Positions 3,058 to 64,000 of a stretch of DNA of 64,000 nucleotides are shown one piece after another; within the stretch, counting starts at the first letter, position 1; each line of letters starts with the position of its first letter. The notes beneath the pieces are model-generated. The model was not told the DNA's origin, made no database searches, and was given only the letters and a program-made list of their open reading frames with translations. Both the position numbers and the translations under genes were made by a program. The stretch is from NCBI RefSeq assembly GCF_016433145.1, contig NC_058135.1, positions 276,750,211-276,814,210 of the forward strand, read 5' to 3'. This DNA is from Gracilinanus agilis. Taxonomy: Eukaryota.

Positions 3058-3252
3058 CTTTAATATTCTAAGGAAAAGGAAGGTCTGTATATTTTTTTGT
3101 CCTCATACAGAAGTAATGCATATCTGTAGATTGGTGATTGCTAATTCACAGGAAAAATCTCAAATGAGAGAGTGTATTATTAATTCAGTTCTAGGCAGAA
3201 TTGTAGGCAGCACTAGGCAAAGATTCAGATCATTACCCAAATTCATTGTTTT

Positions 3253-8413: not shown

Positions 8414-8504
8414 CTTCAACTTCAGTTCCAATTTGAGCATGATTTTGTTATATTATTATAAGTAAAACAACTTGCTAAATTCCTTAGAAAACTTTTCTTG
8501 GAGA

Positions 8505-8514
8505 AATAAATAAA
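8505..8514 (+). terminator. Candidate poly(A) signal of OR8K copy 1 (overlapping AATAAA pair; paralog about 58793)
   Basis: About 90 nt after the stop codon and conserved in both copies. Confidence 0.45.
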
Positions 8515-9320: not shown

Positions 9321-9540
9321 TTTTTTGTGTGTGAGTGTTTTTAAACCATTATCTTCTGTCATAGAATCACTGCTGTATATTTGTTCTAAGGCCAAAGAGT
9401 AGTAAGGGCTAGGTAGGCAATAGGGGTTAAGTGAGTTTATCAGAGTCACATAGCTGGGAAGTGTCTGAGGCCAGATATTAAGCAAGGACATCCCATCTCT
9501 AAGCCTGGTTCTCAATCTCCTGAACCACCCAGCTTACTCC
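9321..9540 (-). mobile_element. SINE1_MD-like SINE (paralog at 59608-59818)
   Basis: Diverged SINE1 body, present in both duplicate copies. Confidence 0.85.
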
Positions 9541-11789: not shown

Positions 11790-12101
11790 GTGGTAAATGA
11801 AAGTCATATGTGCTTTAAGAGGATTACCATATTTAAAGTATTATAGTGGTCATTCTGGTAGAAAATCAAAAGAGTTAAATATCCTGAAAAATGAGGTTTA
11901 GTGTCAGGCAAATAGAAACCAAATTTACATTTATTTGGAAGATGACACTAAGGAAATTAGAGAGTGATTTGAGAATTACTAGGTGAAAGGATTTCTACCA
12001 AAGGGAAACTGACTTTTAAGAATACATATTGAGACCCATAAGTAAATTTAAATGAAAAAGATAAAGGAATTTGTGAATGAATGAAAATAAATCAATTATA
12101 C

Positions 12102-12695
12102 TGTAAGGGTTAAATTAAGAAGTGTGACAAAGTGAGGAGAGCAGTTTAACATTAACTTTGTTTAATTTAAGAAAGAAGTACAGATAGTAAGATAGAAAAG
12201 ATTAACAGAGAATCTATTAATCTTATACCCTATAAATATACCTAAAGTTCCTAATAATATCTAAAATTTCCTAAAACTACCTCTGATTCTGAGGACAGTT
12301 TCTTCTGCATGTCAAGCCTATCTTAACCTACTCTAGCTATAAATTATTCACTAACTACCTTACTCCCTAAAATAATAGTCACCACTCACTCACTCCTTCA
12401 ATCGGTTTTCTACAGTGGTATAACTGTTACCAGCCAACTGCCAGTAGCCCCTTGCCTCAGAGACAGACCTTCTACTCTCTCGAGATCCCAGAGCCAAAAG
12501 ACCCCCAACTGTCAGCCTGCTGCTTCCTTATCTCCTCACTCATCATCTCCCCCTCCTCACTTCCTGTATGAGGGCCTATTAATTCTTCTCCTCAGTCCCA
12601 GTCTCACTGATAATGGAATCTTCAGCTCTGGTTAACTGACTCCTGTAAGTTCTGATCTATTTAGGCATCCTACTCTCTATCCTCTTAAGGACACA
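12102..12695. mobile_element. Solo LTR (paralog at 62398-62988)
   Basis: TGTAAGGG...ACA termini and LTR-like composition; TSD not resolved. Confidence 0.65.
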
Positions 12696-15559: not shown

Positions 15560-16530
15560 CTGTTGCATATACTAGAATTAGAGGATAAAATAGAATGTGA
15601 AAAAAAATTAACCAATCACCTGCTAAAATAGATCCCCAAATGAAAACTCACTGAAATGGTATAGCTAAATTCCAAAACTCCCAAGCTGAAAAATAATATG
15701 TTCTACAATCAGTGAGGAATAAACCACTTAAATATTGTGGAGTCACTATCAAGATTACACAGGATTTGGGTAGCTGGGTAGCTCAGTGGATTGAGAGCCA
15801 GGCCTAGAGAAGGGGAGGTCCTAGGTTTAAATCCAGCCTCAGACACTTCCCAGCTATGTGACCCTGGATGAGTCACTTGATCCCCATTGACCACCCTTCC
15901 CACTCTTCTACTTAGGAGCCAATACACAGAAGTTAAGGGTTTAAAAATGTAAAAAAGAAAGAAACCAAAAAAAAAAAAAAGATTACACAGGATTTATCAA
16001 CTCCTACATTAAAGGATTAGAGGGCTAGGAATATGATACTCCAGAAGGCAAAAGAAATAGAATTACAACAAAAATAATCTAATCAACCAAACTAAATGTA
16101 ACCATTTGGGAAAAATCATATTTAAGGAAATAAAGGATTTTCAGGCATTCATGATAAAAAACATGAGTTTCAAAATTAATATCCAGTATTCTAAGTATTA
16201 TATCTAAGAATATTTATTATATCTAAGAATATTTATTAAACTAGCATAAAAACCAAGAGCAAAAAGCCACTTCTCAGACCACACATAGAGAAAAAAGAGA
16301 AAGGGGAAGCAATTACAGCAGACTTATACATAACATGACCATGCAACATGGTACAGAGATCAAAGGAATTCTTGGAAATTCTAAGAAATGCTGGGGTATG
16401 TAGTTCAAAGGCACAAAATCTGCATTCATACATACTCCCCTGGATCCTTTGGGAGACCAGTCTCCCCAATGAATATTGGAAAGTTAATCAACTTAAAACT
16501 TACAATCATTTGTGGATAAAAGGGAAATAA
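15560..16530 (+). mobile_element. Old L1 ORF1 fragment interrupted by a SINE
   Basis: atcaagattacacaggattt...ggaatatgatactccagaaggcaaaag matches L1 ORF1 C-terminal sequence. Confidence 0.65.
15768..15980 (+). mobile_element. SINE1_MD-like SINE
   Basis: A/B-box head, A tail, 17-bp TSD aagattacacaggattt (15751-15767 and 15979-15995). Confidence 0.92.
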
Positions 16531-17452
16531 AAGAGAAAAAACAAAACCAATGATTGCTATATTGACAAAAAGTCAATTTTGGGGAAGTCCACTTTGGCAT
16601 AAAAGTATACATTCCAAACAAACCCCCCATGGTTCAATTCAGTACATCCCACAGTTCACTCTGGATCTTCTGCTGAAGCCTTTGGTCTCTGCAGGCATCT
16701 TCATTGCACCTTCTCTAATCAGGTTTGCCTTCTGGATTCTGGGAGGTAGTCTCTTGTTCTAAATTAGCCTCAAATTCAAATGAAAGTTCAGAACAATGAC
16801 TTAGTCCTCTCCCCCTGAGAAGGATAATAACATACAAAGGGATCACTCAGGGATACATGGCTGTGTTATGAGGTATATGAATCAATTGCAAAAGAAAATA
16901 GAAAACATCCAAAAATCAAAATAAAAGAGAAAAACTCACCTGTGGATGAAATAAAAAAAATATCAAAGTCTTAGGTCTAAAAAATCAAAATAAAGGAAAA
17001 ATAAACCTTTAATGGGTCCTTGCATCAGGGCCCAATTAAAGCAATTTTTGTAATTATGAACTTTCCCAAAGAATAGCCAGGACTATAGAAAGTTTGTCAT
17101 ACAATGAAAGACAGAAAAGGGACTAGATTTTAGGAGCCGGGATGGCAGCCAAAGTGAGGTGGTTGATGGAGCTCATGGATGTCCCTGCCTCTTACATATG
17201 TCAAAATAGTCACAACCTCAAACCCCACACAAGTTCAAGTCCCCTTGTCTTGGCTCAAAATTTCATCAATACCACCTGGATTGGTAGGTCTCTTTGACCT
17301 TGTGTTTGATAGACATTATGCAGGTTAGCTTTGTGCTTCTTTGGCACTCTGCAGTGGTTCTTTTTTTCCTTTCTCATGGAATCAGACATAATCATTAAGC
17401 AAATTCCTATAATTTTTAAAATAATCAATGGCATCATTTCTATAGTCTAAAG

Positions 17453-17622
17453 CAGTGATGGGCAAACCAGATCCAGGCCATTGTTTGCCCATCACTGCCT
17501 TAAGTAATTCCCTATTCACTACATCTGGATGTGGGGGCATGCTGATTAGGGGATTGCTTAAGGCAGTGATGGGCAAACTATGGCCTGGATCTTGCCGGAA
17601 GGGAATAATTTGCCCATCACTG
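17453..17622. mobile_element. hAT (Charlie-type) MITE, 170 bp, four TIR copies
   Basis: TIR CAGTGATGGGCAAA at both ends; perfect 8-bp TSD gtctaaag (17445-17452 and 17623-17630). Confidence 0.88.
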
Positions 17623-18454
17623 GTCTAAAGCATTGTTTGGGGTATGCAGTGACATTAAAGTTAATGGACATTTTTAAGCTCACCCTAGTGCAAAACCAAA
17701 AAAAAATAAAAATAAAAAACAACTTAATACTGTTAACATGTGCTTTGACTTCAAAAAAGGAAAGAAAAAAGAAAACTCAAATACTGTATTGCACATGCAG
17801 GAAGAAAAACAGCAATAAAAATGTTTTAAAAATCAAAAATATATAGCTTATAATCAGTGACATACTCTGTCAGCCAAAGAAAGATAGAATACAAAGGTTT
17901 CTCACCCAAAATGAGATCCATTTCCTTTTTTAACTTGGCCATGAATAACTGTGTGAGTACAAATCATTTTCACAAGGTAACAGTTTTTATAAAACAGTAA
18001 TTAAGTAGATAATGCACATTCAAAGAACATATCAATAATTCCCCAAATTCACAATAGCCCAGTTAATAACAATAGCAACCAAAACCATTAGCATTAGCAT
18101 TTACATGAGTTTCTATACATTCACTTGCTGTATGACAGTTAAAAAACCATTGAACTGATGGATACTTGTCACAAATTCTACAAATGTAGCAAATATTTCA
18201 ACCATGACAAAGATATTTTAAACAAAGACTATTATTGCCATTTTTTCAAAATTTGGTAGAAGTGCCTAGAAAAAGAACAAATCTCTTTACTGCTGATGAA
18301 AGCCTTTTGGAGTCTAACATTACCGAGAAATCTGGATTTTTCAGGTGAAAGTAGATTAAATTGAAGAGTTAAAATATCGTACATGCAGAAGCAACTTTTT
18401 GCTTTATGCTTTATATAAAAAACTTTTGGGTATAGAAGAGAGAGAGGGGGAAGA

Positions 18455-19164
18455 GTTACAGAATTTATAAACAGAAACATAAAGACGCATGTAAACGAAG
18501 AAGGGAAAAGGAATTTTGGGATGAAGAAAGAATTCTGGGACATGAAGTCAATGTAGAAAATTATCTAACTATACCAACCAAAATAAAATTAGAGTTGAAT
18601 TGAAAATGTAACTTTCAAATGTAAGACTCCAGAGAAGCATAAAATGACCAACAGAAAAGAGAAACCATGAAGGAAATGAAAAATTTAAATGTTTACATAT
18701 ATAGATAAGAAGATGTCATTGGAACTTCTAAAATTTTTGTTTTTATTAGGTAATTAACAGTACTCAAAGAGGGAAAGCATAGGTGTGAGATGACCATGAT
18801 GGGAAGATTTCAAAAATATGAAATTAAGAGGTAAGAAAAAGGAATGCATTTAGAGAAGGGTAAGGAAGAGGAAGAATAAGGAAAATCACCTCACCTAAAA
18901 GAGTTTAAAAAATGAAGAACTTTTTTCATGGAGGAGAAGGCATAGGGTAGTGGGGAGGGTAGAGGCAATGCTTGAACTTTAGTCAGAATTGGCTCAAAGG
19001 TGGAATAACATATATGCTCTGTTGGATATAGAACACTATCTTACCCTATAGGAAAGTAGGTGTAGAATAGGATGGATAGAAAGGAAGGCAGATTAAGGGA
19101 TGTAGTGGTAATAGATGAAACAGGCTTTTTAGGAGGGAATGGTTAAAAAGAGAAAAGGTTAAAA
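18455..19164 (+). repeat. Duplication block B, copy 1 (old L1 ORF1-end/spacer sequence)
   Basis: About 90% identical by eye to 54395-55090; match ends at aggttaaaa. Confidence 0.85.
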
Positions 19165-19470
19165 GAAGCCAACTATGATGTGGGGAAATTAACATTATTC
19201 ACTGGTTAAAGTCCTTAATAAAATGGTAACAGATAACAAAATTAATTAAAAACTAAAATCTAGCAATATGTTATTTCTGAGGAACATATTTGAAAAAATA
19301 GGGGTCTGGAGTAGACTCTATTTTGCTTCATCAGAGGTTTAAAAAAAACAAGGATAGCTATCATGATGGCAAATAAAGTAAATGTAAAGAAAAATTAGTT
19401 AAAAGAGATAAGCAAGGGGAACTACATTTCCCCAGAAAGTACTTTAGACAATGAATTAATGTCAGTACTA
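18455..19470 (+). mobile_element. Old L1 ORF1-end/spacer/ORF2-EN fragment
   Basis: Purine-rich spacer followed by EN-like aaaagagataagcaagggaactacat. Confidence 0.65.
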
Positions 19471-22406: not shown

Positions 22407-25400
22407 TTTCATTTTAATTAATTTATTATTATTATTTTTTCTTTTTTTTAGTTTTAAACATTTATTAATATTCATTTTTAACATGGTTACATGATTCATG
22501 CTCCTACTTTCCCCTTCACCCCCCGCAATCCCCCCCCCCATGGCCGACCCACATTTCCACTGGTTTTATCATGTGTCCTTTATCAAGTCCTATTTCCAAA
22601 TTATTGGTAGTTGCATTGGTGTGGGAGTTTCGAGTCCACATCCTCAATCATGTCCACCCCAGCCCAGGCGTTCAGGCAGCTGTTTTTCTTATATGTTTCC
22701 TCTCCTGCAGTCCTTCCTCTGGATGTGGGTAACGTTCTTTACCATGAATCCCTCAGAATTGTCCTGGGTTTTTGTATTGCTGCTGGTACAGAGGTCCATT
22801 ATATTCGATTTTGCCATAGTAAATCAGTCTCTGTGTACAATGTTCTTTTGGCTCTGCTCCTATCACTCTGCATCAGTTTCTGGAGGTCTTTCCAGTTCAC
22901 CTGGAACTTCTCCAGTTTGTTATTCCTTTTAACACAATAGTATTCCATCACAAGCATATACCATAACTTGTTCAGCCATTCCTCAATTGAAGGGCATACC
23001 CTCCTTTTCCAGTTTTTTGCCACCACAAAAAGAAACAGCTATAAATATTTTCGTACAAGTCTGTTTATCTATGATCTCTTTGGGGTACAAACACAACAAT
23101 GGTATAGCTGTATCAAAGGGCAGGCAATCTTTTATAGCCCTTTGAGCATAGTTCCAAATTGCCAGCCAGAATGGTTGGATCAGCTCACAACTCCACCAGC
23201 AATGCATTAATGTCCCAATTTGGCCACATCCCCTCCAGCATTCATTACTCTCCCCTTCTTTCATTTTAGCCAATCTGCTAGGTGTGAGGTGATACCTCAG
23301 AGTTGTTTTGATTTGCATTTCTCTAATTATTAGAGATTTGGAACACTTTCTCATGTGCTTATTGATACTTTTGATTTCTTTACCTGAAAATTGCCTATTC
23401 ATGTCTCTTACCCATTTATCAATTGGGGAATGGCTTGATTTTTTATACAATTGCTTTAATTCCTTGTATATTTGAGTAATTAGACCCCTGTCAGAGTTTT
23501 TCATCATAAAGATTTTTTTCCCAATTTGTTCTTTCCCTTCTGATTTTGACTACATTGTTTTTGTTTGTACAAAAGCTTTTTAGTTTAATATAATCAAAAC
23601 CATTTAATTTACATTTTGTAATTTTCTCTAACTCTTGCTTGGTTTTAAATTCTTTCCTTTCCCAAAGATCTGATAAGTATACTATTCTGTGTTCACTTAA
23701 CTTATTTATAGTTTCCCTCTTTATATTCAAGTCATTCACCCATTCTGAATTTATCTTGGTGTAGGGTGTGAGATATTGATCTAAACCTAATCTCTCCCAT
23801 ATTGTTTTCCAAATTTCCCATCAAATTTTGTCAAATAGTGGATTCATGTCCCAAAAGTTGGGCTCTTTGGGTTTATCAAACACTGTCTTGCTGATGTCAT
23901 TTACCCCAAGACTATTCCACTGATCCTCTCCTCTGTCTTTTAGTCAGTACCATATTGTTTTGATGACTGCTGCTTTATAGTATAGTTTAATATCTGGTAC
24001 TGTTAGGCCCTCTTCCTTCACATTTTTTTTCATTATTTCCCTTGATATTCTTGATCTTTCGTTATTCCAAATGGAATTTGTTATAGTTTTTTCTAATTCA
24101 GGAAAGAAGTTTTTTGGTAGTTTGATAGGAATGGTGCTAAATAGGTAAATAAATTTGGGTAGAATGGTCATTTTTATTATGTTAGCTAGTCCTGCCCATG
24201 AGCAATCAATGGCTTTCCAGTTGTTTAGATCCAGTTTTATTTGTTTGGATGTTATGATCTGAGAAGGTTACATTTATTATTTCTGCTCTTTTGCATTTGC
24301 TTGCCATGATTCTGTGCCCTATAACATGGTCAATCTTTGTGAATGTACCATTTGCAGTTGAAAAGAAGGGTATTCCTTTTTGTCCCTATTTATTTTTCTC
24401 CACATGTTAATTAAATCTAATTTTTCTAGGACTTCATTCACCTCTCTTACCTCTTTCTTATTTATTTTTTCATTTGATTTATCTAGATCTGACAGAGGAA
24501 TATTTAGATCTCCCACTAGTATGGTTTTACTATCTCTTTCCTTCTTGAGCTCTTCCAGTTACTCCTTTATGAATTTGGATGCTATGCCACTTGGTGCATA
24601 CATATTGAGCAGTGTTATTTCCTCATTGTTTATACTGCCTTTAATCAGGATGTAATGACCTTCCCTGTCTTTTTTAATCAAATCTATTTTTACTTTGGCT
24701 TTGTCAGAAATCATAATAGCCACTCCTGCCTTCTTTTTCTCATTTGACACCCAAAAGATTTTGTTCAAGCCCTGAACCTTAAACTTGTGTATGTCCACCC
24801 GTCTCATATGTGTTTCTTGTAGACAACATATGGTGGGATTTTGGTTTCTAATCCACTCTGCTATTTGCTTCCGTTTTATGTGAGAGTTCATCCCATTCAC
24901 ATTCAGCATTATAATTATCAGCTGTGCATTCCCTGACATTTTTGTATTCTCCCCTATTCCTACCCCTTCTTCTTAACCTATTTCCTTCTAAACCAATGGG
25001 TTGCTATTAAGCTGGTATTCCTTATCCCCTCCCTTGATTGACTTCACTTTCTACCCCCTCCCTTGTTATTCCCCACGTTTTGTTTTGAAGGCCTAATAAA
25101 TTCCCTCCCCCTTCTTCTCCCCTCCCTTTTTTGACCTCCCCACTCCCCTGCTCCCCTTGGTTTATCCCTTCTGACTTTCTCAGTAGGGTTAGATAGAGTT
25201 TTATATCCCAATGGATAGTATAGCTACTCTTCCCTCTCTGAGTTGATTATGCTGAGAGTAAGGTTTAAAAATTACCTCTTGATGTTCTCTTCCTCTCCTT
25301 CTTATAATAGTATTTATCCCCTCCCCATCCCATGCCTTCTTTTTGTGTCATAGATTATCCTATTTTTCTTATTCACTCAAGTTTCTCCTGGTGTCCCCCT

Positions 25401-27300
25401 CCATTCACCCTCCTCTTTCCCACCGCCCATATCATCTTAGACCATTCAGCACTCCACCCTCTCCCCATAAATCATTCACTTAGTAGTGAATGGAGTTCCC
25501 TACAGAGAATTATACATAGCATTTCTCCACATAGGAATACAGAAAATTAGATCTTACTGAGGCCCTTAAAAAGGCAAATCTAAAAAATTATGAGTTTTCT
25601 TTCTTTCCCCTCTGTTTCTTATTTACCTTTTCATGTTTCTCTTGATTTTTGTGGTTGGATATCAAACTTTCCATTTAGCCCTGGTCTTTTCTGTGCAAAT
25701 ACCTGGAAATCTTCAATTTTGTTGAATGCCCATACTTTCTCTTGGAAGTATATAGTCAATTTTGAAGGGTAGTTGATCCGTAGTTGCAGGCCCAGCTCTC
25801 TTGCCTTTCTGAATATCATATTCCAAGCTTTGCGGTTTTTTAGCGTGGAGGCTGCCAGATTCTGTGTGATCCTGATTGGTGCTCCTTGATATTTGTCTCT
25901 TTCTGGCTTCTTGTGAGATTTTTTTCTTTTACTTTGAAGCTCTTGAATTTGGCAATTATATTCCTGGGCGTTTTCATCTGGATCAAACGTCGCGGGTGAT
26001 CTATGGATCCTTTCAATGTTTATGTTGCCCTCTTATTGTAGAACTTCAGGGCAATTTTGCTGAATAATTTCTTTTAGTATGGAGTCCAAATTTCTATTAA
26101 TTTCTCCCTTTTCAAGGAGACCAATGATTCTCAAATTGTCTCTTCTAGACCAGTTTTCTTGGTCTGTCACTTTCACATTGAGATATTTCATGTTTCCTTC
26201 TATTTTTTCAGTCTTTTGGCTTTGTTTTATTTGTTCTTGTTGTCTTGAGAGATCATTAGCTTCTAATTGTTCAATTCTAGCCTTTAAGGAGTGGTTTTCC
26301 TTTTCAATCTGGTCATTTCTGGTCTTCAGTTGACTTGCCTCACTTTCTAATTGTGAAATTCTGCCTTTTAAACTGTTATTTTCTTGCCTGATTTCCTTTT
26401 GAACTACTTCCCATTTCTCTGACCAAATCTTTTCCAACTTTCACATCATCTCAGTTTAGAACATTTCAAGAGCTTGTGACCAGTTTTGATTATCTTGGGG
26501 TGGTTTGGATATGATTGCTTGTTTTTCTCCTCTTCTGATTGCTTGGTAGTCTGGATTTTCTCTGTGTAAAAGTTGTCCAGTGTTAAAGATGTCTTCTTCT
26601 TGTTGTTAATCTTTCTCTCTTTCTTCTGGACTTCCGGGATCTGGGTAGCCATCTTTAGCCCAGCAGCTTCTCAGCTTTATCCTCGCACTCAGGGTCTGTC
26701 TGCGGTCTTTTGGTTCCTGAGGTCTGAGGTCTGGTTTTTTCCAAGGTCAAGCCCCCTGGTGGACCCTCTTGCTTGATCCTCTGCCAGAGGCTCCTTTACA
26801 AGTCTCAGGGCACTGCTTCCACAGTCGTATACCCATCTGCACTGGTTCCCCACTCAGGGTTTCAGAGCCTTTGCTCCCATCTGTGTCCACCTCCGTCCGA
26901 GTTTCCACCCGTGCCTGGGCTCAGAGTCTGTGTGTGTTCCTCAGCTTTTTGGGGTCCTAAATCTTGCTGCTCTCAGTAACAGGCCCTGGAGCTGCCAATG
27001 ACTCGATGGGTGCCCCAAACTTGCTCTATTTCTTTTGACCTGGCTTAGGCGCTGCAGGTGGTGTGTGTGGGGAGGGGGAGGGGAGGGTGGTTGCTCAGCC
27101 TGCGATTTAGTGAGTGCTGTTTTACCCCTTTATAGCATGGAAATGTCCCGATTCCACATACCTTCCACACTGCACCCCGTTGTGGGGTCCCTCTGTTTGA
27201 CTGGGTTTGTTTTTATGCCCCCTTGAGAAGTCCTATATGTTTCGGTCAGGAGAGGTTAAGCACTGCTTTTTACTCTGCCGCCATCTTAACACGGAACTCC
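22407..27300 (-). mobile_element. LINE-1 (L1_MD-like) with intact termini, decayed ORF1/ORF2 and an internal deletion of RT
   Basis: 5' end GGAGTTCCGTGTTAAGATGGCGGCAG at 27300; ORF1 coiled-coil and RRDNLRIIG fragments (25631-26652); EN domain NVNGMNSHIKRK...LQETH (24559-24939); C-terminal ORF2 ([14 protein letters not shown]); G-rich 3'UTR and A/T tail; 15-bp TSD ctgaacttcacttca at 22392-22406 and 27301-27315. Confidence 0.95.
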
Positions 27301-52874: not shown

Positions 52875-52879
52875 TCTGA

Positions 52880-54155
52880 ACCACTAGGAGTACCCATATA
52901 ACTGAGGTCAGAGACCCATTGGAGTATTTAGAAAGTTCTTGCTTACTAAACTTATTTTCACAAGTGCAGGGAGTTGAGCTATAAAAAGTGAAGTTACCTT
53001 ATACTTTGGTTGCAAAGGGTCATAATGGTAAATCATTTCCTTAGTGAGAAAGTAGGAGAAAGAAAGTCAATCAAAAAGCTGCTAACATAATCCAGGAGAC
53101 AATATAAAATTGGGGTTGGGGGAGGGACCATACTTAAAGAGATTTGGAGTAGATAACATTGGTGATCTATTTCTACAGAATTTTAGATTTTCCAGGTAAT
53201 TTCCCCACTACTAATGAGATCAAATGAGATAATTATAAAAAAATTCTTGGTACATTAAAAGTTATCACTCTGTAAATATTTATTCTCTTTCTCTTTTCCT
53301 TATAAACTTGTAAGGAAGATAACAATAACATTATCATTATCACTTTAATTTGATAGATAAGAAAACTGAAGCTGAGAGAGATGATATATCTTGGACAGGG
53401 TAAGAAAAATAATGAGTCTCAGAGACAAATCTCAAATCCTGATCTTTCGACTCCAAGTTGAGAGTTCCTTCTACTCAACCACACTACAAATCAATAATTT
53501 TTCTTTCCTCAAACTCCAGGATTCCATAATTGCTTCTTAATGGCTACTCTGTGTTTGGATCATTCTTACACAGAGAAACTGAAGAACTTTTGTTGTTTTT
53601 TCCTAGAGTATTGATGATTTTTTCTTCACCAGAATATTCACTATGTACTGAGAGAAAAATCTAAAAGAGAGAAAAGAGAAGCAAGAATCACCCAGTCCAT
53701 ATGACCTACCTGTAAGAAGATAGATTGTTCTGGCTCAGCACAGAAATATTCAGAAAAAAATCTGAGTGATTTATTAAACTTCTCATTCCCCTTTGGGTCC
53801 AAAGATGAAACTCTGTGTAGGTTAAAAATAAGTTATAATAGTCCTCAAGGGAAGAAAGAAGACATCTTTTAATTGTATCTGCACTCTAAAATCATTAAGA
53901 AACAAAAGCCCCAGCCCTGTGCTCTTTAAGATCTAATTCTATTTGTCTCTGGATTAATCAATTTTAGCAGAAGTGTTTTAGAAATAATATTGTCATTGAA
54001 AATTGAGACTTTTGTTGTACTTTCCCTCTCAGTCTTTAATCATAGACATAAATTTAGGCAAACTTCCATCTCTTTGAGTTTCACCTATCAGATGATGATA
54101 ATTATTGCTGTTTATTTCATAAGACTATTTTGATGATTAACTTAGATTACTACTA
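52880..54155. repeat. Older paralogous block C, copy 2 (upstream of the OR5AL1-like gene)
   Basis: Paralog of 39180-40370. Confidence 0.85.
53704..53875 (-). promoter_or_regulatory. Putative OR promoter/exon 1, paralogous copy
   Basis: TCCTCAAGGGA 53842-53852, TAATTG 53870-53875, donor CAG|GTAGGT 53712-53704. Confidence 0.5.
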
Positions 54156-54230
54156 TGTGAAGTAGAAATAGAGGAGACATTGAAAATTTCAAAATGCACC
54201 CTATTTAAACACTATTAAAAATATGACCGA

Positions 54231-54381
54231 GGATCAGTTCACAACTCCACCAGCAATGCATTAATGTCCCAGTTTTGCCACATCCCCTACAGCATTCATT
54301 ACTCTCCCCTTCTTTCATTTTAGCCAATCTACTAGGTGTGAGGTGATACCTCAGAGTTGTTTTGATTTGCATTTCTCTAAT
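54231..54381 (-). mobile_element. 151-bp internal L1 ORF2 fragment without tail or TSD
   Basis: 5 mismatches in 151 nt versus 23177-23327. Confidence 0.9.
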
Positions 54382-54394
54382 GATACAGAATAAT

Positions 54395-55090
54395 GTTACA
54401 GAACTTATAAACAGTAACGTAAAGACACATGTAAATGAAAAGGGGAAATGAATTTTGGGATAAAGAAAGAATTCTGGGAGATGAAATCAATGTACAAAAT
54501 TCTCTAACTATACAAACCAAAATAAAATTAGAGTTGAATAGAAAATGTAACTTTCAAATATAAGACTCCAGAGAAGCATAAAATGACAAACAGAAAAGAG
54601 AAAACACGAAGGAAATGAAAAGTTTAAATGTTTACATATATGGATAAGAAGATGTCATTTGAACTTCTAAAAAATTTGTCTTTATTAAGTAATTACCATT
54701 ACTCAAAAAGTGAAGGCATAGGTGTGAGATGACCATGATGGGAATGCATTTGGAGAAGGGTAAGGAAGAGGAAGAATGAAGACAATCACCTCACCTAAAA
54801 GAGGTAAAAAAATGAAGAACTTTTTTTAATGGAGCAGTAGGCATAGGGTAGTGGAGAGGGTAGAGGCAATGTTTGAACTTTACTCTCATCAGAATTGGAT
54901 CAAAGATGGAATAACATATATGCTCTGTTGGATATAGAACGCTATCTTACCCTATAGGAAAGTAGGTGTAGAATGAGATGAGAGAACAGGAATAGGATGG
55001 ATAGAAAGGAAGGGAGATTAAGGGATGTGGTGGTAATAGGTGAAACAGGCTCTTTTAGGAGGGAATGGTTAAAAGAGGAAAGGTTAAAAA
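54395..55090 (+). repeat. Duplication block B, copy 2, fused to the start of block A
   Basis: gttacagaacttataaacag...aggttaaaa followed immediately by block A sequence. Confidence 0.85.
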
Positions 55091-55507
55091 CTTGTCCCAA
55101 GAAACTTAAATGTATAACTTCTAACTTTAGTGCCTACCATCTCTTATTACTTTTATTGATGTGATGATAGAGTCTATATACTTTCACTCTTTCTCATTCA
55201 GTCAAGGAAGGCATCTCTCCACCAGGTTATGCTGAGTCATGAAAAATTAGAAATTGCCTAAACTGGTATGGACTGCCTCTAGAGTTATGAATTTATTTTC
55301 TTGTATTATTGGGTTCTGTTTCAAATGCATACAATGATACCTCTAAATTTATGATTTTAATTAAAATGGGCCTCATTCAAAAAGTTTGGAGTCATTACTA
55401 AAGGAAAGAAACATGTAAACATTAGAGGCAGCTAGACAGCTCAGTGGAGTGAGTGCTTAGTCTGGAGCCAGGAAGACCCAAGTTAATAGATGTCCTTTCA
55501 CTTTTAC

Positions 55508-55997
55508 TGATGAGTCTATCTTGTCAAATTATTTGTGGCTCATGGAATGGGATAAGAGGAATGTGATTAAATCAGGAAGGTCACAAAAGAACTCAAAATC
55601 TCTTGCTGATCAGTGACAAACTTTATTGACTTCAGGAAGGTACTTACAGAGAAAGTGATGTAGGCTAAGGGATTAGGTAAGCTTTTTACAGGGACAATGG
55701 TTACTAATGATTTACAATCTTAGTACAATGACTTAGTTTACCTTACTGAAGCTTAGACAGAGTTTTCTACAGGATAATAAATCATAGGCAAATTTGTAAC
55801 CATCTAACCAAGCTTCTCACAGAATTCCTACATTAGTAATTTCTTGGAAGAACTTACAATTTTTACAAAGTACACCATGGAGTGGTTGGAAAGGAAGGGG
55901 TTGGGGGGCCTCATGTGATGCCTAGGCTAAGTTTCTAATTGTTTCTAAATTATGACTGTGTTTTAACTGGGTTTTACTCATGCTGCTGGGGGCTATA
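55508..55997 (-). mobile_element. Paralogous solo LTR inside MAR1
   Basis: Duplicate of 4674-5155. Confidence 0.7.
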
Positions 55998-57769
55998 GTT
56001 TACTAGCTATATTAACCTTTGTTTGCCTTAATCTACTGCAGAACAAAAAAGAAATGAAACCACTCCAGTATCTTTGCCAAAAGAAACCCATGGACAGTAT
56101 GGTTGATAGGGTAATAAAGAAATGGATACAACTCAACAACTATACATGGCAATTACCAAATAACATGAAAAAAACATATCTTATTTGATACAAACATCAA
56201 TTATATTTGAAGTTCTATGATTATGATTATAAATGAAAAAAGTATGATTCAAAGTTAAAAAACCTGGAGCAGACAGAGATTAAGTGATTTTCCAAGCTTC
56301 ACACTGATAATCAATGAACGAGATGACTTTTGAATGCAATTTTCTTGAGTTTAAGCCAGTGGCTTATGCACTCTGCCTCTTAGAGTCCTGATAATTTCAT
56401 TTTCTGCTCACAAAAATCCTGCAATATAAGTACTGTTAATAGTCTTATTTTACAAGAAAGAAAAAATGGTCAAGACAGGTGAAGTTACCTGCCATAGGTC
56501 ACATGGCTCATATGCAAGGGAAGATTTAATAGTTTTTCTTGACTACAGGGCCATTGCTCTATCCATTGAAAAACATACCTTCTTTTAAAAGATTTTTAAA
56601 ATTCTCTAGAGAATTCAATCTATTGACCATATCCTGGTTATTTCTGGATCTCCTGCCTTCTCTCTTTCTACTATCATCCAAAATACAAACACAAAATGGA
56701 AAGATCTCCATCTTGACCAGCCAAAGGTATGTTATCATTTAGATAGTAGATATTCTTTATTTACTAGGCCTTTACTGTGTGACTGATTAAAATTGATCTA
56801 TTCTGATTGACTAAAGTCCTCTCCAACAACTTTCTGTAATATTCTTGGATAGGCAACAACCAAAACAATATCACCTACAAAGCAGAGACTGGCAATAATT
56901 ATACTTATTATTTCATGGGGCTGGTTGAAAATATTGACACTGTTATATATTATGGCAATTTCCTTGAGATCATCCTATCAAGTTCATTAAAGCTCATCAG
57001 TACTTTGGGGATATAGCCTCATGGGGATTAAGAAACCCATAAAGTTTTTCTCCAGCAACTGACTTTAGGGATAACATGAACAAACAAGCTACTGATGATT
57101 CTATCTTCCAGGTGAGTAGATTACAGAATTATTTATGTTCATCTCATTAATTAGATAAAAAAATCATATTTCTCTTAAGTAATTTAGTTAAAAAGAGAAG
57201 AAAAATAAATACTATGTGGGAATTTAAGGGAATAAGGAAATTTATGTGCTATATACGAATTTATTTAAATTGAAAGTGAATGAAAGTTTTTTAGAAATCT
57301 CACCACTTGAAATGCCCCATCTCTGACCAGTGTCACAAATGCTATGTTTTTATTCAGAGAAAAATCAAATGAACTAATTAAGGATCAACAATAACAGGTG
57401 TTCTCATATACTCTATCCTTCCTCAGGATCTAATTATGATACATCTAAACACTGATTATTTAAAATATTTTAAAATAATTCATACTATTATAGTCTCATT
57501 TTATATGTAACACATGATTTAAAACTTCCCACAATTCACTCCTAATTTTGTAAAATAAAATTATAATCAATTTTAAATTTAATAACATGATGATATGATA
57601 TGACATGCTATGATGAAAATGATGTTAATAAATTGTGATTGTGTGGAAAAATTGCTGCTCAATTTATCTGGGATGTTTCTACATACTAACAGTCTAACTG
57701 ATTATGCAAACTATGATCAAAGAAGGCTTCTTCCTTTTATACACAGATTATGTATCTTGGATTGAAGAA

Positions 57770-58708
57770 ATGACCAAGTTGAATGAAACCAAAGGAAGTC
57801 AGGTGACTGAATTCATTCTCATGAGCATCACAAACATTCCGGAGCTGAGGGGTCCCCTTTTTGTTGTCTTTTTACTCAACTACATGGCCACAGTTGTGGG
57901 GAATCTGGGCCTGATCATCTTAACAAGTGTTGATTCCCACCTGCAAACTCCGATGTACTTTTTTCTCAGGCATCTGGCATATGTTGATCTTGGCTATTCC
58001 ACAGTCATTGGTCCAAAAATGCTAGCCAGTTTCATAGTGGAAAAAAATACCATCTCCTACAATGAATGTGCAACACAGTTCAGTTTCTATATCATCTTTA
58101 TCACCAGTGAATTTTTTATTCTGTCTGCCATGGCATATGATCGCTATGTGGCTATCGTTAAGCCCCTTCTCTATATTGTCATCATGTCAAACAGAGTGTG
58201 TTGGGTCTTGGTAGTTATTACTTACCTCTATAGTATCATGGTATCCTTACTAGTAACAATTAAGATATTTAATTCATCATTCTGTGCATCAAATGTAATG
58301 AGACAGTTCTTCTGTGATAGTGTCCCTCCTTTGTACATTATTTGTTCAGACATAAGAGAGACTAAACTAATCATTAAGTTCTTTGCTGCATTTGATTTAA
58401 TTTCTTCCCTTTCTATAGTCCTTGTCTCCTACATACTCATTATTGTGGCCATCCTTAGTATGAACTCTTCTGAGGGAAGGCATAAAGCTTTCTTTACCTG
58501 TGGCTCTCATCTCACAGCAGTGGTTCTCTTCTATGCTACACTTCTCTTCATGTACATGAAACCCCAATCTAGTTACTCTTTTGATACAGAGAAGATAGCC
58601 ACTGTGTTTTATACCCTGGTTATTCCCATGCTCAACCCTTTGATTTACAGCTTGAGGAACAAAGAGGTTAAGGATGCCTTTAAAAGGGTCTTTAAGAAAC
58701 TGATATAA
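57770..58708 (+). CDS. OR8K3-like: Olfactory receptor, OR8K subfamily-like, intact 312 aa (copy 2)
   Basis: Same motifs; 19 aa differences from copy 1 by manual alignment; [10 protein letters not shown] (C to V); acceptor CAG at 57744-57746. Confidence 0.92.
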   Translation: MTKLNETKGSQVTEFILMSITNIPELRGPLFVVFLLNYMATVVGNLGLIILTSVDSHLQTPMYFFLRHLAYVDLGYSTVIGPKMLASFIVEKNTISYNECATQFSFYIIFITSEFFILSAMAYDRYVAIVKPLLYIVIMSNRVCWVLVVITYLYSIMVSLLVTIKIFNSSFCASNVMRQFFCDSVPPLYIICSDIRETKLIIKFFAAFDLISSLSIVLVSYILIIVAILSMNSSEGRHKAFFTCGSHLTAVVLFYATLLFMYMKPQSSYSFDTEKIATVFYTLVIPMLNPLIYSLRNKEVKDAFKRVFKKLI

Positions 58709-59607
58709 GCCTTCAAATTAAGGTCCAATGTAGAATATGATTTTGTTATATGTTATAAGCAAAACAACTTGCTAAACCCCTTTTCTTGAAGAAATAAATA
58801 AAATTTTCCTCCTGATATTTACCAGATAATTATTTTTGTGACTTCAAAAAATTCCAAACTCCAATTAATATTAATTGTGAATGAAGGAAATTAGGAGAGC
58901 ATTTAGTCTAAATTTTCTTTATAAATTTTCCCCTATTATATTACCAATAGTGAGTATACCATCTTTAGTGGAAATTTCCTTTGTGGGAGTATCAGCAAAT
59001 TAACAAAAACTTTAAAAAGTGAATTTATGAACTGAGTCAGACACTAGACATAAAAAATAAGTGAAAATGGTTCTTTTCATCAAGTAATTTACTTTATAAA
59101 GGGATAAATAAGTACAGGAAAACTTCCCTTCATATTATGGCAGCTATTTCATTTTTGCATACCTCACATTGCTGGGAAATTTTTACTTATAATTTCTCTA
59201 CAACTTTCATCTATTCCTTCTGGTCTTTCCCTTTATGTGCAAGCAGAAAATATTTATTCCTTCTTTTTGGTGGCAATAATTTAAATGCTTTGAGGAAAAT
59301 TTCAATCCCACTGAGACACTTTCTTCTGTCCCAAATCTCCCATTCATTTGCTGAAATAAAAAGAAAACTGTCTAATAGAGCATTTAAATCTTAAAATTTT
59401 ACTACAACTTTTTAGAGGCCTTGCATATTTAGAGTTTCTGTGACTAAATGTCGTATTTGCTATTTGTGATCTGTGATATTCTAAGCAATATTTGCCCTCT
59501 CAGATTCTAGTTCCTTTATAAAAACTGTAGATTTTATATATATTTAAGATCCATTCCAGTTCAACATTTATGGCACTTACATCTTCTTTGTTTTAATACC
59601 ATATATT

Positions 59608-59818
59608 CTTTTTTTTTGTGTGTATTTTTACACCATTAACTTCTGTTGTAGAATCACTGCTGTGTATTAGTTCTAAGGCCGAAGAGTAATAAGTCAATAG
59701 GGGTTAAGTGACTTGCCTAGAGTCACATAGCTAGGAAGTGTATGAGGCTAGATATTAAGCTAGGACCTCCCATCTCAAGGTCTGGTTCTCTATCCACTGA
59801 GCCACCCAGCTTCCTCCC
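59608..59818 (-). mobile_element. SINE1_MD-like SINE, duplicated copy
   Basis: Orthologous position to 9321-9540. Confidence 0.85.
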
Positions 59819-60718
59819 ATTTTTCTTAAATAAATTGTCAAATGCCATAATTTAATACCTCTTTACTATTTTGATTGCCTTCTGTTCACTTTGGAAGTTA
59901 TCATTGCCAATTCTGAAACATGTCACATAAAATTGAATATAATCCTCCTAAAATGTTCTGGCCAAGGCAGAATGCAACTAGACTATCGGTCTATTCCTGT
60001 TGCTATGGAGCCTATTTTAGCTTATTTAGTTTCCACATATTCTTATAGTCACTTATTAAAATTGGTTTGAAATTAAAAATCAAGGTCTTCAGAGAAATCC
60101 ACATGTGGTTATGTTTGCCCTATTATTTTTTTTGTAAAGTTGTTTGTTTTAATTTTTAATCCCAAATCAAATATAAACTTTTTATTTGTCCCTATGGAAT
60201 TTCTTAATGTTATTAATCTCATCTTAGTACATATAATGTTTAGAAAATATCAGGAATATTTTGTTGGTACATATGGGAATGGATCCTAGACATTTTTTTT
60301 TATATTTCACTGGCTGACTAATTAAGAAAGTTTCTATTTTGTAGATTCCAATGTCTTAAAATTTCTCTTCCTTCCTATTTCAAATATCACTCTGAGAAGA
60401 TGTCATGATCTGTATTAGTCAGAATATGTAATTCTTCACTGCTCAGCATTTCAGGCTCACCAGATATTTCCTACAATGAAAAAGTTTTTTTGGGGAAGAT
60501 TTGGAATCAGATCCTTTTGAAAAGAATGTATGAATTCTGATCTCAATAGGATTAAATGACATCATAAGTCTTAAGAAGAGAAAGTATTATGGGATCAGGT
60601 AGTGACTGGAAAGGAAATATGTTAAAAAATAAACTGCAAAAAAATTATCCTTTTTCAGATCTTGTTCTTTTTTTCAGGAGAAATGCTATGAACAAAATTA
60701 TAACTCAATATTTCCTTT

Positions 60719-62082
60719 GGTGTGATTAGAAAATGGGATAATTTTATTATTAATTGTTTTATAATGATCATATTGGACATAAAGGTACTTTTTTATGTGG
60801 AAAAAGTATTGGAGAGCTTTCTTCCTCAAAATTAATGCATTCTTAGGAGTTCCAAGGATCTGTGAACAAAAATAGCCCCAGAGAGTATCCTCCCCCATGG
60901 TATCATTAAAATGGTAAAGTTATCCTGGGGGAAGAGTTTGCTTTGTATTGATGGAATTCTTGAATGTTTCCCCTTAACTACACAATTTCAGAATAGTGAT
61001 AATATGAGAATGCTTTCATTATACACATTTTAAGACTAGACTTATGAACTTTAAGTAAAAAAATGTGACACATAAGTGATATGAATGAGTTAAGTTTACA
61101 AATAGTATCTCAAGTAATTTTTACATTAACCCCAAGAGGTAGATGTAAGAAATATCAACACCATTTTACTGATGAATGCACTAAAGACTAAGTAATTTAC
61201 TGAGTTCATTTAGGCTAAAATTGTTGGAGGCAATATGTAAACCAGGTCTTCCTTAACATAAGTCTAGAATTTGGTTCTACTTTGCCTTATGCTGAGCTAC
61301 ATTTCAACTCAAGGTCATACCGTTACTTAGTGCAATCATTATCATCATTTAAAACACATTTATTTAATAATTAATGCTATATACTTCCATTGAATTTGGT
61401 GATTAGAAAATGGAATTATTTTATTATAAATGGTTTTATAATGATTATATTGGACATGAAGTTACCTTCATTTATGTGAAAAAAAAGTATTGGAGAGCTT
61501 TCTTCCTCAAAATTAATGCATTCTTAGGAGTTCCTAGGATCTGTGAGCAAAAATAGCCCCAGAGAGTATCCTCCCCAATGGTGTCCTTAAAATGGTAAAG
61601 TTGTCCTGGGGGAATAGTTTGCTTTGTATTGATAGAATTCTTGAATTTTTTCTCTTAAATACACAATTACAGAATGGTGATAATATCAGAATGCTTTCAT
61701 TATACCCATTTTAAGATAAGACCTATGAACTTTAAGAAAAAAAAAGTGAAACATAGGTGATATGAATGAGTTAAGTTTACAATGAGTATCCCAAGTTAAT
61801 TTTACAATAACCCTAAGAGGTAGATACAAGAAATATTAACACCATTTTACTGATTAATACAATAAAGATTAAGTAACTTACTGAGGTCATTTAGGATGAA
61901 ATTTTTCTGGGCCAGATTTAAACCAGGGCTTCCTGAACATAAGTCCAGCATTTGGTTTTTTGGCCTCACACTGGACTACCTTTTAACTTAGGGCCATCTG
62001 GTTACTTAGTGCCATCATCATCATCATTAAAAACACATTTATTTAATAATTAATACTACATACTTCCAGTGCATTTGGTGAT
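60719..62082 (+). repeat. Paralogous copy of the 680-bp tandem duplication
   Basis: Same two-unit structure within block A copy 2. Confidence 0.9.
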
Positions 62083-62397
62083 GTGGTAGATGAAAGACAT
62101 ATGGGCTTTAAGAGGATTACCATATTTAAGGTATTATTGTGGTCATTTTGGTAGAAAATCCAAAGAGTTAAATATTCTTCTGGAAAATGAGATTTAGTAT
62201 CAGACAAATAGAAAGCAAATTTACATTTATTTGGAAGGTGACACTAAGGAAATTAGAGAGTTATTTGAGAATTACTACATGAAAGGATTTCTACCAAAGG
62301 GAAACCAACTTTTAAGAATACATATTGAGACCCATAAGTCAATTTGAATAAAAAAGAAAAAGGAATTTGTGAATGAATGAAAATAAATTAATCATAC

Positions 62398-62988
62398 TGT
62401 GAGAGTTAAATTAAGGAGTGTGACAAAGTGAGGAGAGCAGTTTAACATTATCTTTGTTTAATTTAAGAAAGAAGTACAGATAGAAAGATAGAAAAGATTA
62501 AAAGAGAGTCTATTAATCTAATACCCTATAAATATACCTAAAGTTCCCAATACTATCTAAAATTTCCTAAAATTACCTCTGTCTTCTGAGGACAGTTTCT
62601 TGTGCCTGGCATGCCAAGCCTATCTTAACCTACACTATCTATAAATTATTCACTAACTCCCTAAAATAATAGTCACCACTCACTCACTACTTAAATTGGT
62701 TTTCTTCAGTGGCCAAACTGTTACCAGCCAACTGCCAGTTCCCCTTACCTCAGAGACAGACCTCCTACTCTCTGGAGATCCCAGAGCCAAAAGACCCACA
62801 ACTGTCAGCCTGCTGCTTCCTTATCTCCTCACTCATCATCTCTCCCCCCTCACTTTCTGTATGAGGGCCCATTACTTCTTCTCCTCATTCCCAGTCTCAC
62901 TGGTAATGGAATCTTCAGCTCTGGTTAATTGACTCCTGTCAGTTCTGATCTATTTAGGAATCCTGCTCTCTAGCCTCTTAAGGACACA
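62398..62988. mobile_element. Paralogous solo LTR
   Basis: Duplicate of 12102-12695. Confidence 0.65.
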
Positions 62989-63392
62989 GAGGGAAAGAAA
63001 AAGAAAATCCTTTTTTAACAATACACTCTATGGAAAAAATATGCTCATCACTGGGGACACAAATAGAAATGGATGATGATCCCTACTATCAAGAAGCTTA
63101 TGTCCTAATAGGTAGAAGCATCAAATACACAATGTCTCAGCTATATGTCATATGAAAAAACCTTGTATTACTTAATAATGAAGCATATTGTAATTCATCT
63201 TCTTTAATGTGATTCCAGTAATAAAATCAAAGTTGATCTAATATTGGACTGTAGTGCCAACAATATTGATAATATATAAATTTCATTTCTGGGTCATGTT
63301 GTGGGTCTGAGATTTTTAATAATCATATGGCATTTCAACTTTCTTGTCCATCAGTGGTTATCAGTGGATGTCAAGGATTTTCATTCATTTTT

Positions 63393-63577
63393 TTTTAATT
63401 TTAAACCCTTAACTTCTGTGTATTGACTTATAGGTGGAAGATTGGTAAGGGTAGGCAATGGGAGTCTAGTGACTTGCCCAGGGTCACACAGCTGGGAAGT
63501 GTCTGAGGCTGGATTTGAACCCAGGACCTCCTGTCTCTAGGCCTGGCTCTCAATCCACTGAGCCACCCAGCTGCCCC
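63393..63577 (-). mobile_element. SINE1_MD-like SINE, specific to duplicate copy 2
   Basis: 15-bp TSD ttttcattcattttt; empty site in copy 1 at about 13091-13105. Confidence 0.92.
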
Positions 63578-64000
63578 TTTTCATTCATTTTTAACAGTGA
63601 TAGTTCCCATGAACAATGGCTTGAAGAAGCTTCACATATCAGTGTAACAGACCAGAAAATAAGGTTCAAAATATTTCAAAGAAGTGTCTGACTCAGACGA
63701 ATACTTAACTTCATGATCACTAGGCACTCTATATCTGCTTTTGTGAAACTTGGCTTAATGTAATTTCTCACTTTCTTACTTTATCCATGCCAATGAAACT
63801 GTGTACTCATTACTGATATACCTATATGTACGGGTAATAGAGTCTTAAAGATAGAATTCTATCACTTCTGAAGCATATATATTATTAGCCTCTTCCTATT
63901 CAATTTTTCATTCCTATACCTTCATGGTATGCTATGATCAGGAGATATTTTGATTGCTTTCATAATTTGAAGGCCTCATATGAAGTATATTTTTCCTCTT

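What the first reader, a model, noticed from the sequence alone, without database searches (positions are those of the whole stretch)
54231..64000. Circularly permuted duplication of an OR gene: candidate eccDNA-mediated OR birth
In the source locus the order is A (4254..) ... B (..19164). In the copy, the end of B (aggttaaaa, 19164) is fused directly to the start of A (aaacttgtc, 4254) at 55088-55090 with about 2 nt of AA microhomology, and only the last ~710 bp of B precede A. A 15-kb circle (4254-19164) closed at that junction, reopened near 18455 and re-inserted ~35 kb away would produce this arrangement. Circular-intermediate duplication is known for other loci (cattle KIT colour-sided alleles), whereas OR expansion is usually attributed to unequal crossover. 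The alternative is an A-B|A-B tandem later truncated by a deletion; the young L1 patch at the left breakpoint is compatible with that. B is L1-derived, but its ~90% identity matches that of A, arguing for co-duplication.
Basis: partly seen in the sequence, partly recalled or inferred. Interest (0 to 1): 0.8.

Follow-up and report, generated by a model that had tools for sequence, protein, structure and literature searches.

The report
Permuted duplicate of an olfactory-receptor unit
A smell-receptor gene of the agile gracile opossum was copied about 50 kb downstream, and the copy carries a piece from the far end of the source unit joined in front of its first base; this points to a circle or other head-to-tail intermediate, a route already described for human and cattle duplications and not proven here.

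Summary
A1 (4254-13513) and A2 (55088-64000) are about 92% identical, and both carry an intact OR8K1-like gene (dN/dS 0.22). B2 (54395-55089) matches B1 (18455-19164) and is fused to the first base of A2 with a 2-nt AA overlap. A sequencing run of the same species holds both sampled 31-mers that span this junction.

New here: B is not an L1 3' end. It is an internal L1 piece, the ORF1 tail plus the inter-ORF spacer. In copy 1 the same L1 runs on past 19164 into its ORF2 endonuclease. So B2 is cut at both ends, is not a retrotransposition product, and almost certainly descends from the B1 locus.

Left of B2 lie 242 bp of filler: 78 bp of unknown origin, a 154-bp antisense internal L1 fragment, and 10 bp.

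The mechanism is open. The junction is head-to-tail, as expected from a circle, a backward template switch or a tandem intermediate. The deciding feature, the right end of copy 2, lies beyond the window and could not be fetched.

The family has at least three copies of similar age plus two older ones. At least one other copy crosses the proposed reopening point.

Permuted duplications of this kind are published for human and cattle, so this is a new member of a known kind.

The parts
4254..13513 (+). A1: visible part of the source unit. Homology to copy 2 starts exactly at 4254.
   Evidence: Self-BLAST and MAFFT statistics: about 92-93% substitution identity to 55088-64000.
7475..8413 (+). OR8K1-like gene A1 (312 aa, P0002), intact.
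   Evidence: ORF list, translation, protein search with 7tm_4.
13514..15571 (+). 'mid': low-copy continuation of the unit. Several paralogous versions exist in the same species; three other organisms hold one version each.
   Evidence: summed depth is 130-320 against about 20-47 per single contig, with up to 7 contigs carrying alternative letters; in the control part, three of the four listed alternative letters are those of copy 2.
15572..16200 (+). L1-a: a separate L1 fragment (ORF1 C-terminal part with its own ORF1 tail), interrupted by a SINE at 15768-15980 that has a 16-bp target duplication.
   Evidence: tblastn with ORF1 of the minus-strand L1, frame translations, sequence.
16201..18454 (.). 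N: block of high-copy repeats. It includes a palindromic element at 17448-17632 that is high-copy only in this species. It ends in a 23-nt polypurine tract just before B1.
   Evidence: Depth of 10^4-10^5, self inverted match, sequence.
18455..19164 (+). B1: internal L1 segment, the last ~50 codons of ORF1 plus the inter-ORF spacer. It ends at about the ORF2 start.
   Evidence: Collinear with the minus-strand L1 at 25743-25109. ORF1 tail ...KLELN.KCNFQ..DSREA* is visible.
19165..19470 (+). 'post': the same L1 continues into the ORF2 endonuclease, so 19164 is not an element end.
   Evidence: tblastn of an endonuclease fragment hits 19276-19470, E 3.7e-6. BLASTN matches 19218-19469 to 24879-24608, E 1.9e-9. 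An X4 contig crosses 19164 (record 28).
24403..26440 (-). Reference L1 on the minus strand, used to place B: ORF1 coiled coil, ORF1 dsRBD-like domain, ~694-bp spacer, ORF2 endonuclease.
   Evidence: Pfam Tnp_22_dsRBD, Exo_endo_phos, tblastn.
52879..54152 (+). C2: older (72-77%) paralogue of 39179-40371, the upstream region of a minus-strand OR. Homology to C1 stops at 54152. This is the acceptor side.
54153..54230 (.). 78-bp filler with no source in the window.
   Evidence: blastn-short.
54231..54384 (-). 154-bp internal fragment of L1 ORF2 C-terminal region, antisense, cut on both sides. It is 96% identical to 23177-23330.
   Evidence: Local alignment and flanks. Antisense orientation was assigned by comparison with the human L1 sequence recalled from memory; it agrees with the negative AT skew of 20-28 kb.
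54385..54394 (.). 10-bp filler 'acagaataat', which resembles the first bases of B2 ('acagaacttat').
   Evidence: Sequence. The resemblance is my own reading.
54395..55089 (+). B2: copy of B1, cut at both ends.
55086..55091 (+). Head-to-tail junction: source position 19164 joined to 4254 with a 2-nt AA overlap.
   Evidence: Junction 31-mers are held by run X4.
55088..64000 (+). A2: derived copy, running off the window end.
57770..58708 (+). OR8K1-like gene A2 (312 aa, P0001), intact. Against A1: dN/dS 0.22, 20 differences across the 334-aa ORFs.

Best explanation
Copy 2 is a dispersed segmental duplicate of a ~15-kb OR8K1-like unit in Gracilinanus agilis, about 8% diverged from its source.

Shown: the two ends of the source unit, position 19164 inside an L1 and position 4254, are joined head-to-tail by non-homologous joining on a 2-nt overlap.

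Inferred: the joined form was a closed circle of the unit. The circle was opened about 0.7 kb before the closure point, next to a polypurine tract, and was integrated at the edge of block C2. About 240 bp of filler DNA was captured at the left integration junction. The copy carried the gene with more than 3 kb of upstream sequence, and both genes have since been kept by purifying selection.
For: - Permuted direct-orientation homology.
- B is an internal L1 piece, and the L1 continues past 19164 in copy 1. Copy 1 therefore keeps the ancestral state and the B2|A2 junction is derived.
- Homology to copy 1 begins exactly at the junction, and there is no homology between the joined flanks.
- Junction k-mers occur in a sequencing run.
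- The copies are 35 kb apart. Older genes lie between them, and copy 1 keeps both of its original flanks. A simple tandem event does not fit.
- Filler at the integration junction and microhomology at the closure junction match what is described for published circle-type duplications (PMC7450558).
- Both ORFs are intact with dN/dS 0.22.
Against: - The right end of copy 2 is unseen, so the defining prediction is untested. A circle predicts that the copy ends at the 18454 equivalent and that total copied length equals unit length.
- The family has at least three similar-age copies, and several paralogous sequences cover 13300-15500. One other copy runs across 18455 (record 27). Nested or repeated events are therefore possible.
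- Three separate filler pieces at the left junction fit serial template switching at least as well as circle insertion.
- Authors of the human cases warn that close, same-chromosome, multi-copy families can mimic the pattern (PMC7188851).
Confidence: 0.42

Rival explanations
1. Serial backward template switching during replication (FoSTeS/MMBIR), with no free circle. The nascent strand left C2 at 54152 and copied two short unrelated templates (78 bp and a 154-bp L1 piece). It then copied 18455-19164, jumped back 15 kb to 4254 on an AA microhomology, and copied the unit onward.
For: There are four successive junctions within 940 bp, with short inserted pieces and 2-nt microhomology. The 10-bp filler resembles the adjacent B2 start, as in templated insertions. 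Donor and acceptor are only about 36-50 kb apart. The human study itself invokes MMBIR for integration.
Against: No source for the 78-bp piece was found in the window. The L1 piece cannot be assigned to a nearby template, because a 96% match is expected for a young L1 family. The pattern equals the circle pattern unless the right end differs.
Confidence: 0.28
2. A tandem or concatemeric intermediate. Either the unit first duplicated in tandem at the donor site (pre-A-B|A-B-post), a piece spanning the junction was copied to the C2 site, and the donor tandem later collapsed by unequal crossover or is missing from the assembly. Or copy 2 is the second unit of an array at the acceptor site whose first unit was mostly deleted.
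For: A head-to-tail junction is the hallmark of tandem duplication. There are at least three similar-age copies, one on an unplaced 5.7-kb contig. There is an assembly gap at 27960-28323. Another copy crosses 18455. An older ~13.8-kb periodicity links 636-1776 to 14533-15496.
Against: It needs three events. Copy 1 is gap-free and keeps both ancestral flanks. An array formed at the acceptor site would require its tandem breakpoint to coincide exactly with the left end of the first dispersed copy, because homology to copy 1 starts exactly at the junction.
Confidence: 0.2
3. B2 is an unrelated L1 fragment captured at the junction, like the 154-bp piece, and the permutation is an illusion.
For: B belongs to a multi-copy L1 family: summed depth is 600-11000 against about 25 for single-copy sequence, in all four runs. 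Another captured L1 fragment lies next to it.
Against: With at most a few hundred copies at least 82% alike in a ~3.4-Gb genome, the chance that one lies within the source unit is under 1%. This is my estimate. The divergence of B equals that of A. The only other L1 in the window that covers this segment is 66% identical.
Confidence: 0.04
4. Assembly mis-join at 55088.
For: The region holds paralogues, a gap and an unplaced contig.
Against: B2 is 9% diverged from B1, so it is a distinct locus. There is no N near the junction. Both junction-spanning 31-mers are in read-derived contigs.
Confidence: 0.02

Closest known systems
Circular-DNA-mediated segmental duplication pairs in human (Chicote et al. 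2020, PMC7450558) and eccDNA-mediated duplications (Takahashi and Innan 2020, PMC7188851)
   Same: The order flip gives two parallel direct diagonals. The ends of the ancestral segment are joined inside the derivative with 0-2 nt of microhomology. Breakpoints lie in interspersed repeats. Short indels or fillers sit at the integration junctions. The copies are not tandem. Whole genes are copied.
   Different: This unit is much smaller (~15 kb against 22-3918 kb) and much closer to its source (~50 kb against 0.09-58 Mb). It lies in a multi-copy OR family. Only one end of the derivative is seen. The filler is longer (242 bp in three pieces).
Cattle colour-sided KIT translocations via circular intermediates (Durkin et al. 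2012, as described in PMC7450558)
   Same: A 2-bp microhomology at the circle-closing junction and a permuted segment order.
   Different: Those are inter-chromosomal, hundreds of kb long, recent and polymorphic, with both ends and the serial steps documented. Here the event is old (about 8% divergence), local, and half is unseen.
Complex duplications by FoSTeS/MMBIR
   Same: Several junctions with microhomology, short templated insertions, and segments taken from nearby sequence in non-collinear order.
   Different: Those are usually described as de novo or pathogenic human copy-number variants. Here the event is fixed and ancient, with a functional gene copy.
OR family expansion by tandem duplication and unequal crossover
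   Same: The result is a new intact paralogue in the same cluster and orientation, in an L1-rich region.
   Different: There is no extended homology at the breakpoints. The copies are separated by older genes. The segment order is permuted.

Membership tests
Circle-mediated (permuted) segmental duplication | Block order flipped (A-B/C-D to B-A/D-C) with both blocks in direct orientation | tested here: met
   B (source 18455-19164) precedes A (source 4254-13513) in copy 2, and both are direct.
Circle-mediated (permuted) segmental duplication | The two ends of the ancestral segment are joined inside the derivative without homology (0-2 nt microhomology) | tested here: met
   19164|4254 with an AA overlap. 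Copy 1 is ancestral at 19164, because the L1 continues there.
Circle-mediated (permuted) segmental duplication | The two ends of the derivative are adjacent in the ancestral locus, so that copy 2 ends at the 18454 equivalent and the copied length equals one unit | not testable with these tools
   Copy 2 runs off the window at 64000. The look-up of encoding contigs returned no DNA for this assembly.
Circle-mediated (permuted) segmental duplication | The acceptor site is contiguous in an outgroup that lacks the derivative | tested here: inconclusive
   Monodelphis has one close orthologue against five G. agilis paralogues. Three other organisms hold 13388-15331 as single contigs. The acceptor site itself was not seen in any outgroup.
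Circle-mediated (permuted) segmental duplication | Two copies only (single reintegration) | tested here: not met
   There are at least three similar-age gene copies (A1, A2, unplaced A3), and up to 7 contig variants over 13300-13800.
Simple tandem duplication / unequal crossover (NAHR) | Copies adjacent, with extended homology at the breakpoints | tested here: not met
   A 35-kb spacer with two older minus-strand ORs separates the copies. No homology links the flanks of 19164 and 4254.
L1 retrotransposition or 3' transduction as the origin of B2 or of the copy | L1 3' end with poly(A) and a target-site duplication | tested here: not met
   B2 is the ORF1 tail plus spacer and stops at the ORF2 start. 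The 154-bp piece is internal and cut on both sides.
FoSTeS/MMBIR complex rearrangement | Multiple junctions with microhomology and short templated insertions from nearby templates | tested here: inconclusive
   Four junctions lie within 940 bp and one has 2-nt microhomology. The templates of the 78-bp and 154-bp pieces were not identified.

The most novel reading that the evidence does not exclude
A free or rolling circular copy of a 15-kb OR unit was made in the opossum germline and reinserted nearby. The lineage-specific burst of this OR8K1-like subfamily (five copies against one in Monodelphis) was driven partly by such circles rather than by unequal crossover. That would make circular DNA a recurrent source of new olfactory receptor genes.
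Probability: 0.3. Interest if true: 0.55.

Novelty: new member of a known kind. Interest (0 to 1): 0.4.

Why it matters
OR repertoires are the largest mammalian gene families, and their growth is usually put down to tandem duplication by unequal crossover. This duplication is breakpoint-resolved, non-homologous and permuted, and it produced a second intact gene under selection. It shows that end-joining or replicative routes, possibly through circular DNA, also add OR genes. It also extends a pattern so far documented in primates and cattle to a marsupial. It does not change the picture unless the circle is confirmed and found to recur in the family.

Tried and rejected
- Fetching DNA beyond base 64000, or for the other paralogues, with the look-up of encoding contigs. 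Only gene tables came back, no DNA, because the assembly file is too large. P0004 is not on record.
Word searches gave no neighbouring-window notes.
- The search of protein representatives, used to obtain a full-length L1 ORF2 protein for mapping, returned only short endonuclease fragments. These were still enough to place the endonuclease at 19276-19470.
- A permissive nucleotide alignment meant to find the 5' end of the L1 that holds B scored no better than shuffled sequence and was discarded. tblastn with ORF1 did not detect B's frameshifted ORF1 tail. That tail rests on BLASTN collinearity and on visual reading of translations.
- My first idea was that B is an L1 3' end whose natural terminus merely abuts A2. 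I rejected it because B is internal and the L1 continues past 19164.
- I first read the 154-bp patch as sense-strand. I corrected this to antisense after comparison with the human L1 sense sequence recalled from memory and with the AT skew.
- I also considered that 16150-18454 is a nested insertion splitting one L1. I rejected it because L1-a and B each carry an ORF1 tail.
Full report
**What the window is.** A protein search with the ORF at 57704-58705 returned 100%- and 94%-identical 312-aa olfactory receptors listed as the window's own. The next hits are named 'olfactory receptor 8K1-like [Gracilinanus agilis]' and lie on a 299-Mb record of assembly GCA_016433145.1. The window has one N run, at 27960-28323.

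**Checking the observation.**
- A1 4254-13513 matches A2 55088-64000 in three collinear pieces.
- B1 18455-19164 matches B2 54395-55089.
- All matches are direct.

After MAFFT alignment, substitution-only identity is 92.0%, 92.9% and 91.2% for the A pieces and 91.2% for B. K2P for B is 0.094; 700-column windows of A average 0.078 (SD 0.019, maximum 0.128). The 84% that BLAST reports for B comes from five indels.

At the junction, copy 2 reads ...aggttaaaa|acttgtcc. B1 continues ...aggttaaaa|gaagcc. A1 is preceded by ...tcatg|aaacttgtc. The overlap is two A's, and there is no other homology between the joined flanks. A 62-nt query centred on the junction gave two sampled 31-mers, and run X4 of the same species holds both. 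X4 may be the sample the assembly came from, so this excludes a chimeric join but is not independent population evidence.

**What B is.** It is not.

A decayed L1 on the minus strand at 24403-26440 provides the reference order:
- an ORF1 coiled coil;
- the ORF1 dsRBD-like domain (Pfam PF17490, above its cut-off);
- a ~694-bp spacer;
- the ORF2 endonuclease (Pfam Exo_endo_phos; tblastn).

BLASTN shows this element is collinear with four stretches of copy 1:
- 15572-16149;
- B at 18524-18698;
- B at 18961-19057;
- the sequence after B at 19218-19469 (E 1.9e-9).

An endonuclease fragment hits 19276-19470 on the plus strand (E 3.7e-6). Translations of B1 and B2 show the end of ORF1...KLELN.KCNFQ..DSREA*, matching ...RPGLNGKFDIQPQKSRET* of the reference.

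So B is the last ~50 codons of ORF1 plus the inter-ORF spacer, and in copy 1 the same L1 runs on into ORF2. Position 19164 is an arbitrary internal point. Copy 1 has the ancestral state there, and the B2|A2 junction is derived. The L1 fragment at 15572-16200 has its own ORF1 tail, so it is a separate element.

**Is B2 a copy of B1 or just another L1?** I laid contigs of four runs on 13300-19299. Single contigs of the same species have depth of about 20-47. B1 bins sum to 600-11000. B therefore belongs to a family of tens to a few hundred copies at 82% likeness or more, and the family is also present in three other organisms.

With that number in a genome of about 3.4 Gb, the chance that one lies inside the source unit is below 1% (my estimate). 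The only other L1 in the window covering this segment is 66% identical. B2 is cut at both ends and lacks any 3' end, so it did not arrive by retrotransposition. I conclude that B1 and B2 descend from one insertion and that the permuted order is real.

**The left side of copy 2.** Homology between the older blocks C1 (39179-40371) and C2 (52879-54152, 72-77%) stops at 40371/54152. Three pieces follow before B2:
- 78 bp with no source in the window;
- a 154-bp piece, 96% identical to 23177-23330;
- 10 bp, 'acagaataat', which resembles the start of B2.

At 23 kb, L1 sequence continues on both sides of the 154-bp match. At 54 kb it does not. The patch is therefore an internal fragment cut on both sides. 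Comparison with the human L1 sense strand (from memory) and the negative AT skew of 20-28 kb show it is antisense ORF2 C-terminal sequence.

Its 96% match does not identify a local template, since a young L1 family gives such matches anywhere. In the source, B1 is preceded by a 23-nt polypurine tract. That is a possible break-prone site, but this is my speculation.

**How far the unit extends, and how many copies there are.** Over the control stretch 13300-13513, three of the four listed alternative letters in run X4 are exactly those of copy 2. The fourth belongs to neither copy. The same pattern continues past the window-end equivalent. Up to 7 contigs carry alternative letters over 13550-13800, with fewer further on. 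Summed depth stays at 130-320 up to 15500. Several paralogous versions, very probably including copy 2, therefore extend at least that far. From 15500 to 19100, high-copy repeats swamp the signal.

One X4 contig, 94.6% identical, spans 18315-18537. It runs straight across the left edge of B1, so at least one other copy of the unit passes through the proposed reopening point (record 27). Whether that copy is the tail of copy 2 cannot be told.

At the protein level there are five G. agilis paralogues against one close Monodelphis protein. A1, A2 and a third copy on an unplaced 5.7-kb contig form a clade, with 18-19 pairwise differences. In three other organisms the stretch 13388-15331 is held as single contigs at about 86% identity. 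The amplification therefore looks lineage-specific.

**The genes.** Both ORFs are intact. They differ at 52 of 1005 nt and 20 of 334 aa across the full ORFs. Over the 312-codon annotated CDS, dN/dS is 0.22. Copy 2 carries 2.7 kb upstream of the CDS, so a functional gene was added.

**Mechanism.** Homology to copy 1 begins exactly at the junction, and copy 1 keeps both original flanks. The two ends of the unit must therefore have been joined before, or while, the copy was placed at the C2 site. Three routes give this result.

2. A backward template switch during replication. This fits the chain of short fillers at the left junction.
3. A donor tandem duplication from which a junction-spanning piece was copied, followed by collapse of the tandem.

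An array formed at the acceptor site is unlikely, because its breakpoint would have to coincide with the left end of the first dispersed copy.

The routes differ in where copy 2 ends, and that lies beyond base 64000. I could not obtain that sequence. I rank them:
- circle 0.42;
- template switching 0.28;
- tandem or concatemer 0.20;
- unrelated L1 capture 0.04;
- mis-assembly 0.02.

**Comparison with what is known.** The order flip, the 0-2 nt microhomology at the closing junction, breakpoints in interspersed repeats and small scars at integration are exactly the criteria used for 24 human cluster pairs (PMC7450558) and 3 further human cases (PMC7188851). The cattle KIT case is cited there. 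Takahashi and Innan warn that close, same-chromosome, multi-copy families can imitate the pattern through nested events. That caveat applies fully here. A full-text search found no paper linking eccDNA to OR gene birth.

**Verdict.** The eccDNA reading is plausible but unproven. This is a new example of a published kind of duplication, in a marsupial OR cluster.

Noticed in passing
window 6586-7093 versus 57400: Copy 2 lacks 508 bp that copy 1 has just upstream of the CDS. The edges share GTG. In copy 1 the stretch starts with a donor-like cag|gtgagg and ends shortly before an acceptor-like ...ccttcctcag. Copy 2 seems to have lost most of a 5'-UTR intron, keeping only about 35 nt.
   Followed up: partly
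window 636-1776 versus 14533-15496: Two collinear matches of 59-65% identity, offset by about 13.8 kb, in low-copy sequence. The stretch before A1 looks like the distal part of an older upstream unit, which suggests an older tandem periodicity of the cluster.
   Followed up: partly
window 17448-17632: A palindromic element (arms about 79% complementary) with summed depth of about 89000 in the same-species run and only 57-506 in three other organisms. It looks like a lineage-specific, hairpin-forming, MITE-like repeat.
   Followed up: no
unplaced 5.7-kb contig of the same assembly (protein P0003): A third intact copy, 94% identical to both A1 and A2 and mosaic between them at diagnostic residues. 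It may belong in the gap at 27960-28323 or elsewhere, and it shows that the assembly of this family is incomplete.
   Followed up: partly
window 63392-63577: A SINE insertion present only in copy 2, 85% identical to the SINE at 15768-15964. It arrived after the duplication.
   Followed up: partly
window 10445-11802 and 60722-62082: A ~680-bp internal tandem duplication is present in both copies (82% and 87% between the halves), so it is older than the A1/A2 split.
   Followed up: no
window 7475-8410 versus 57770-58705: Synonymous divergence of the two genes (dS 0.145) is nearly twice the divergence of the flanking non-coding sequence (K2P about 0.078). The sample is small (27.5 synonymous changes) and the difference is unexplained.
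   Followed up: no
window 24940-25633, minus strand: The reference L1 has a long (~694-bp) spacer between the ORF1 stop and the ORF2 start. B shows the same layout.
   Followed up: partly
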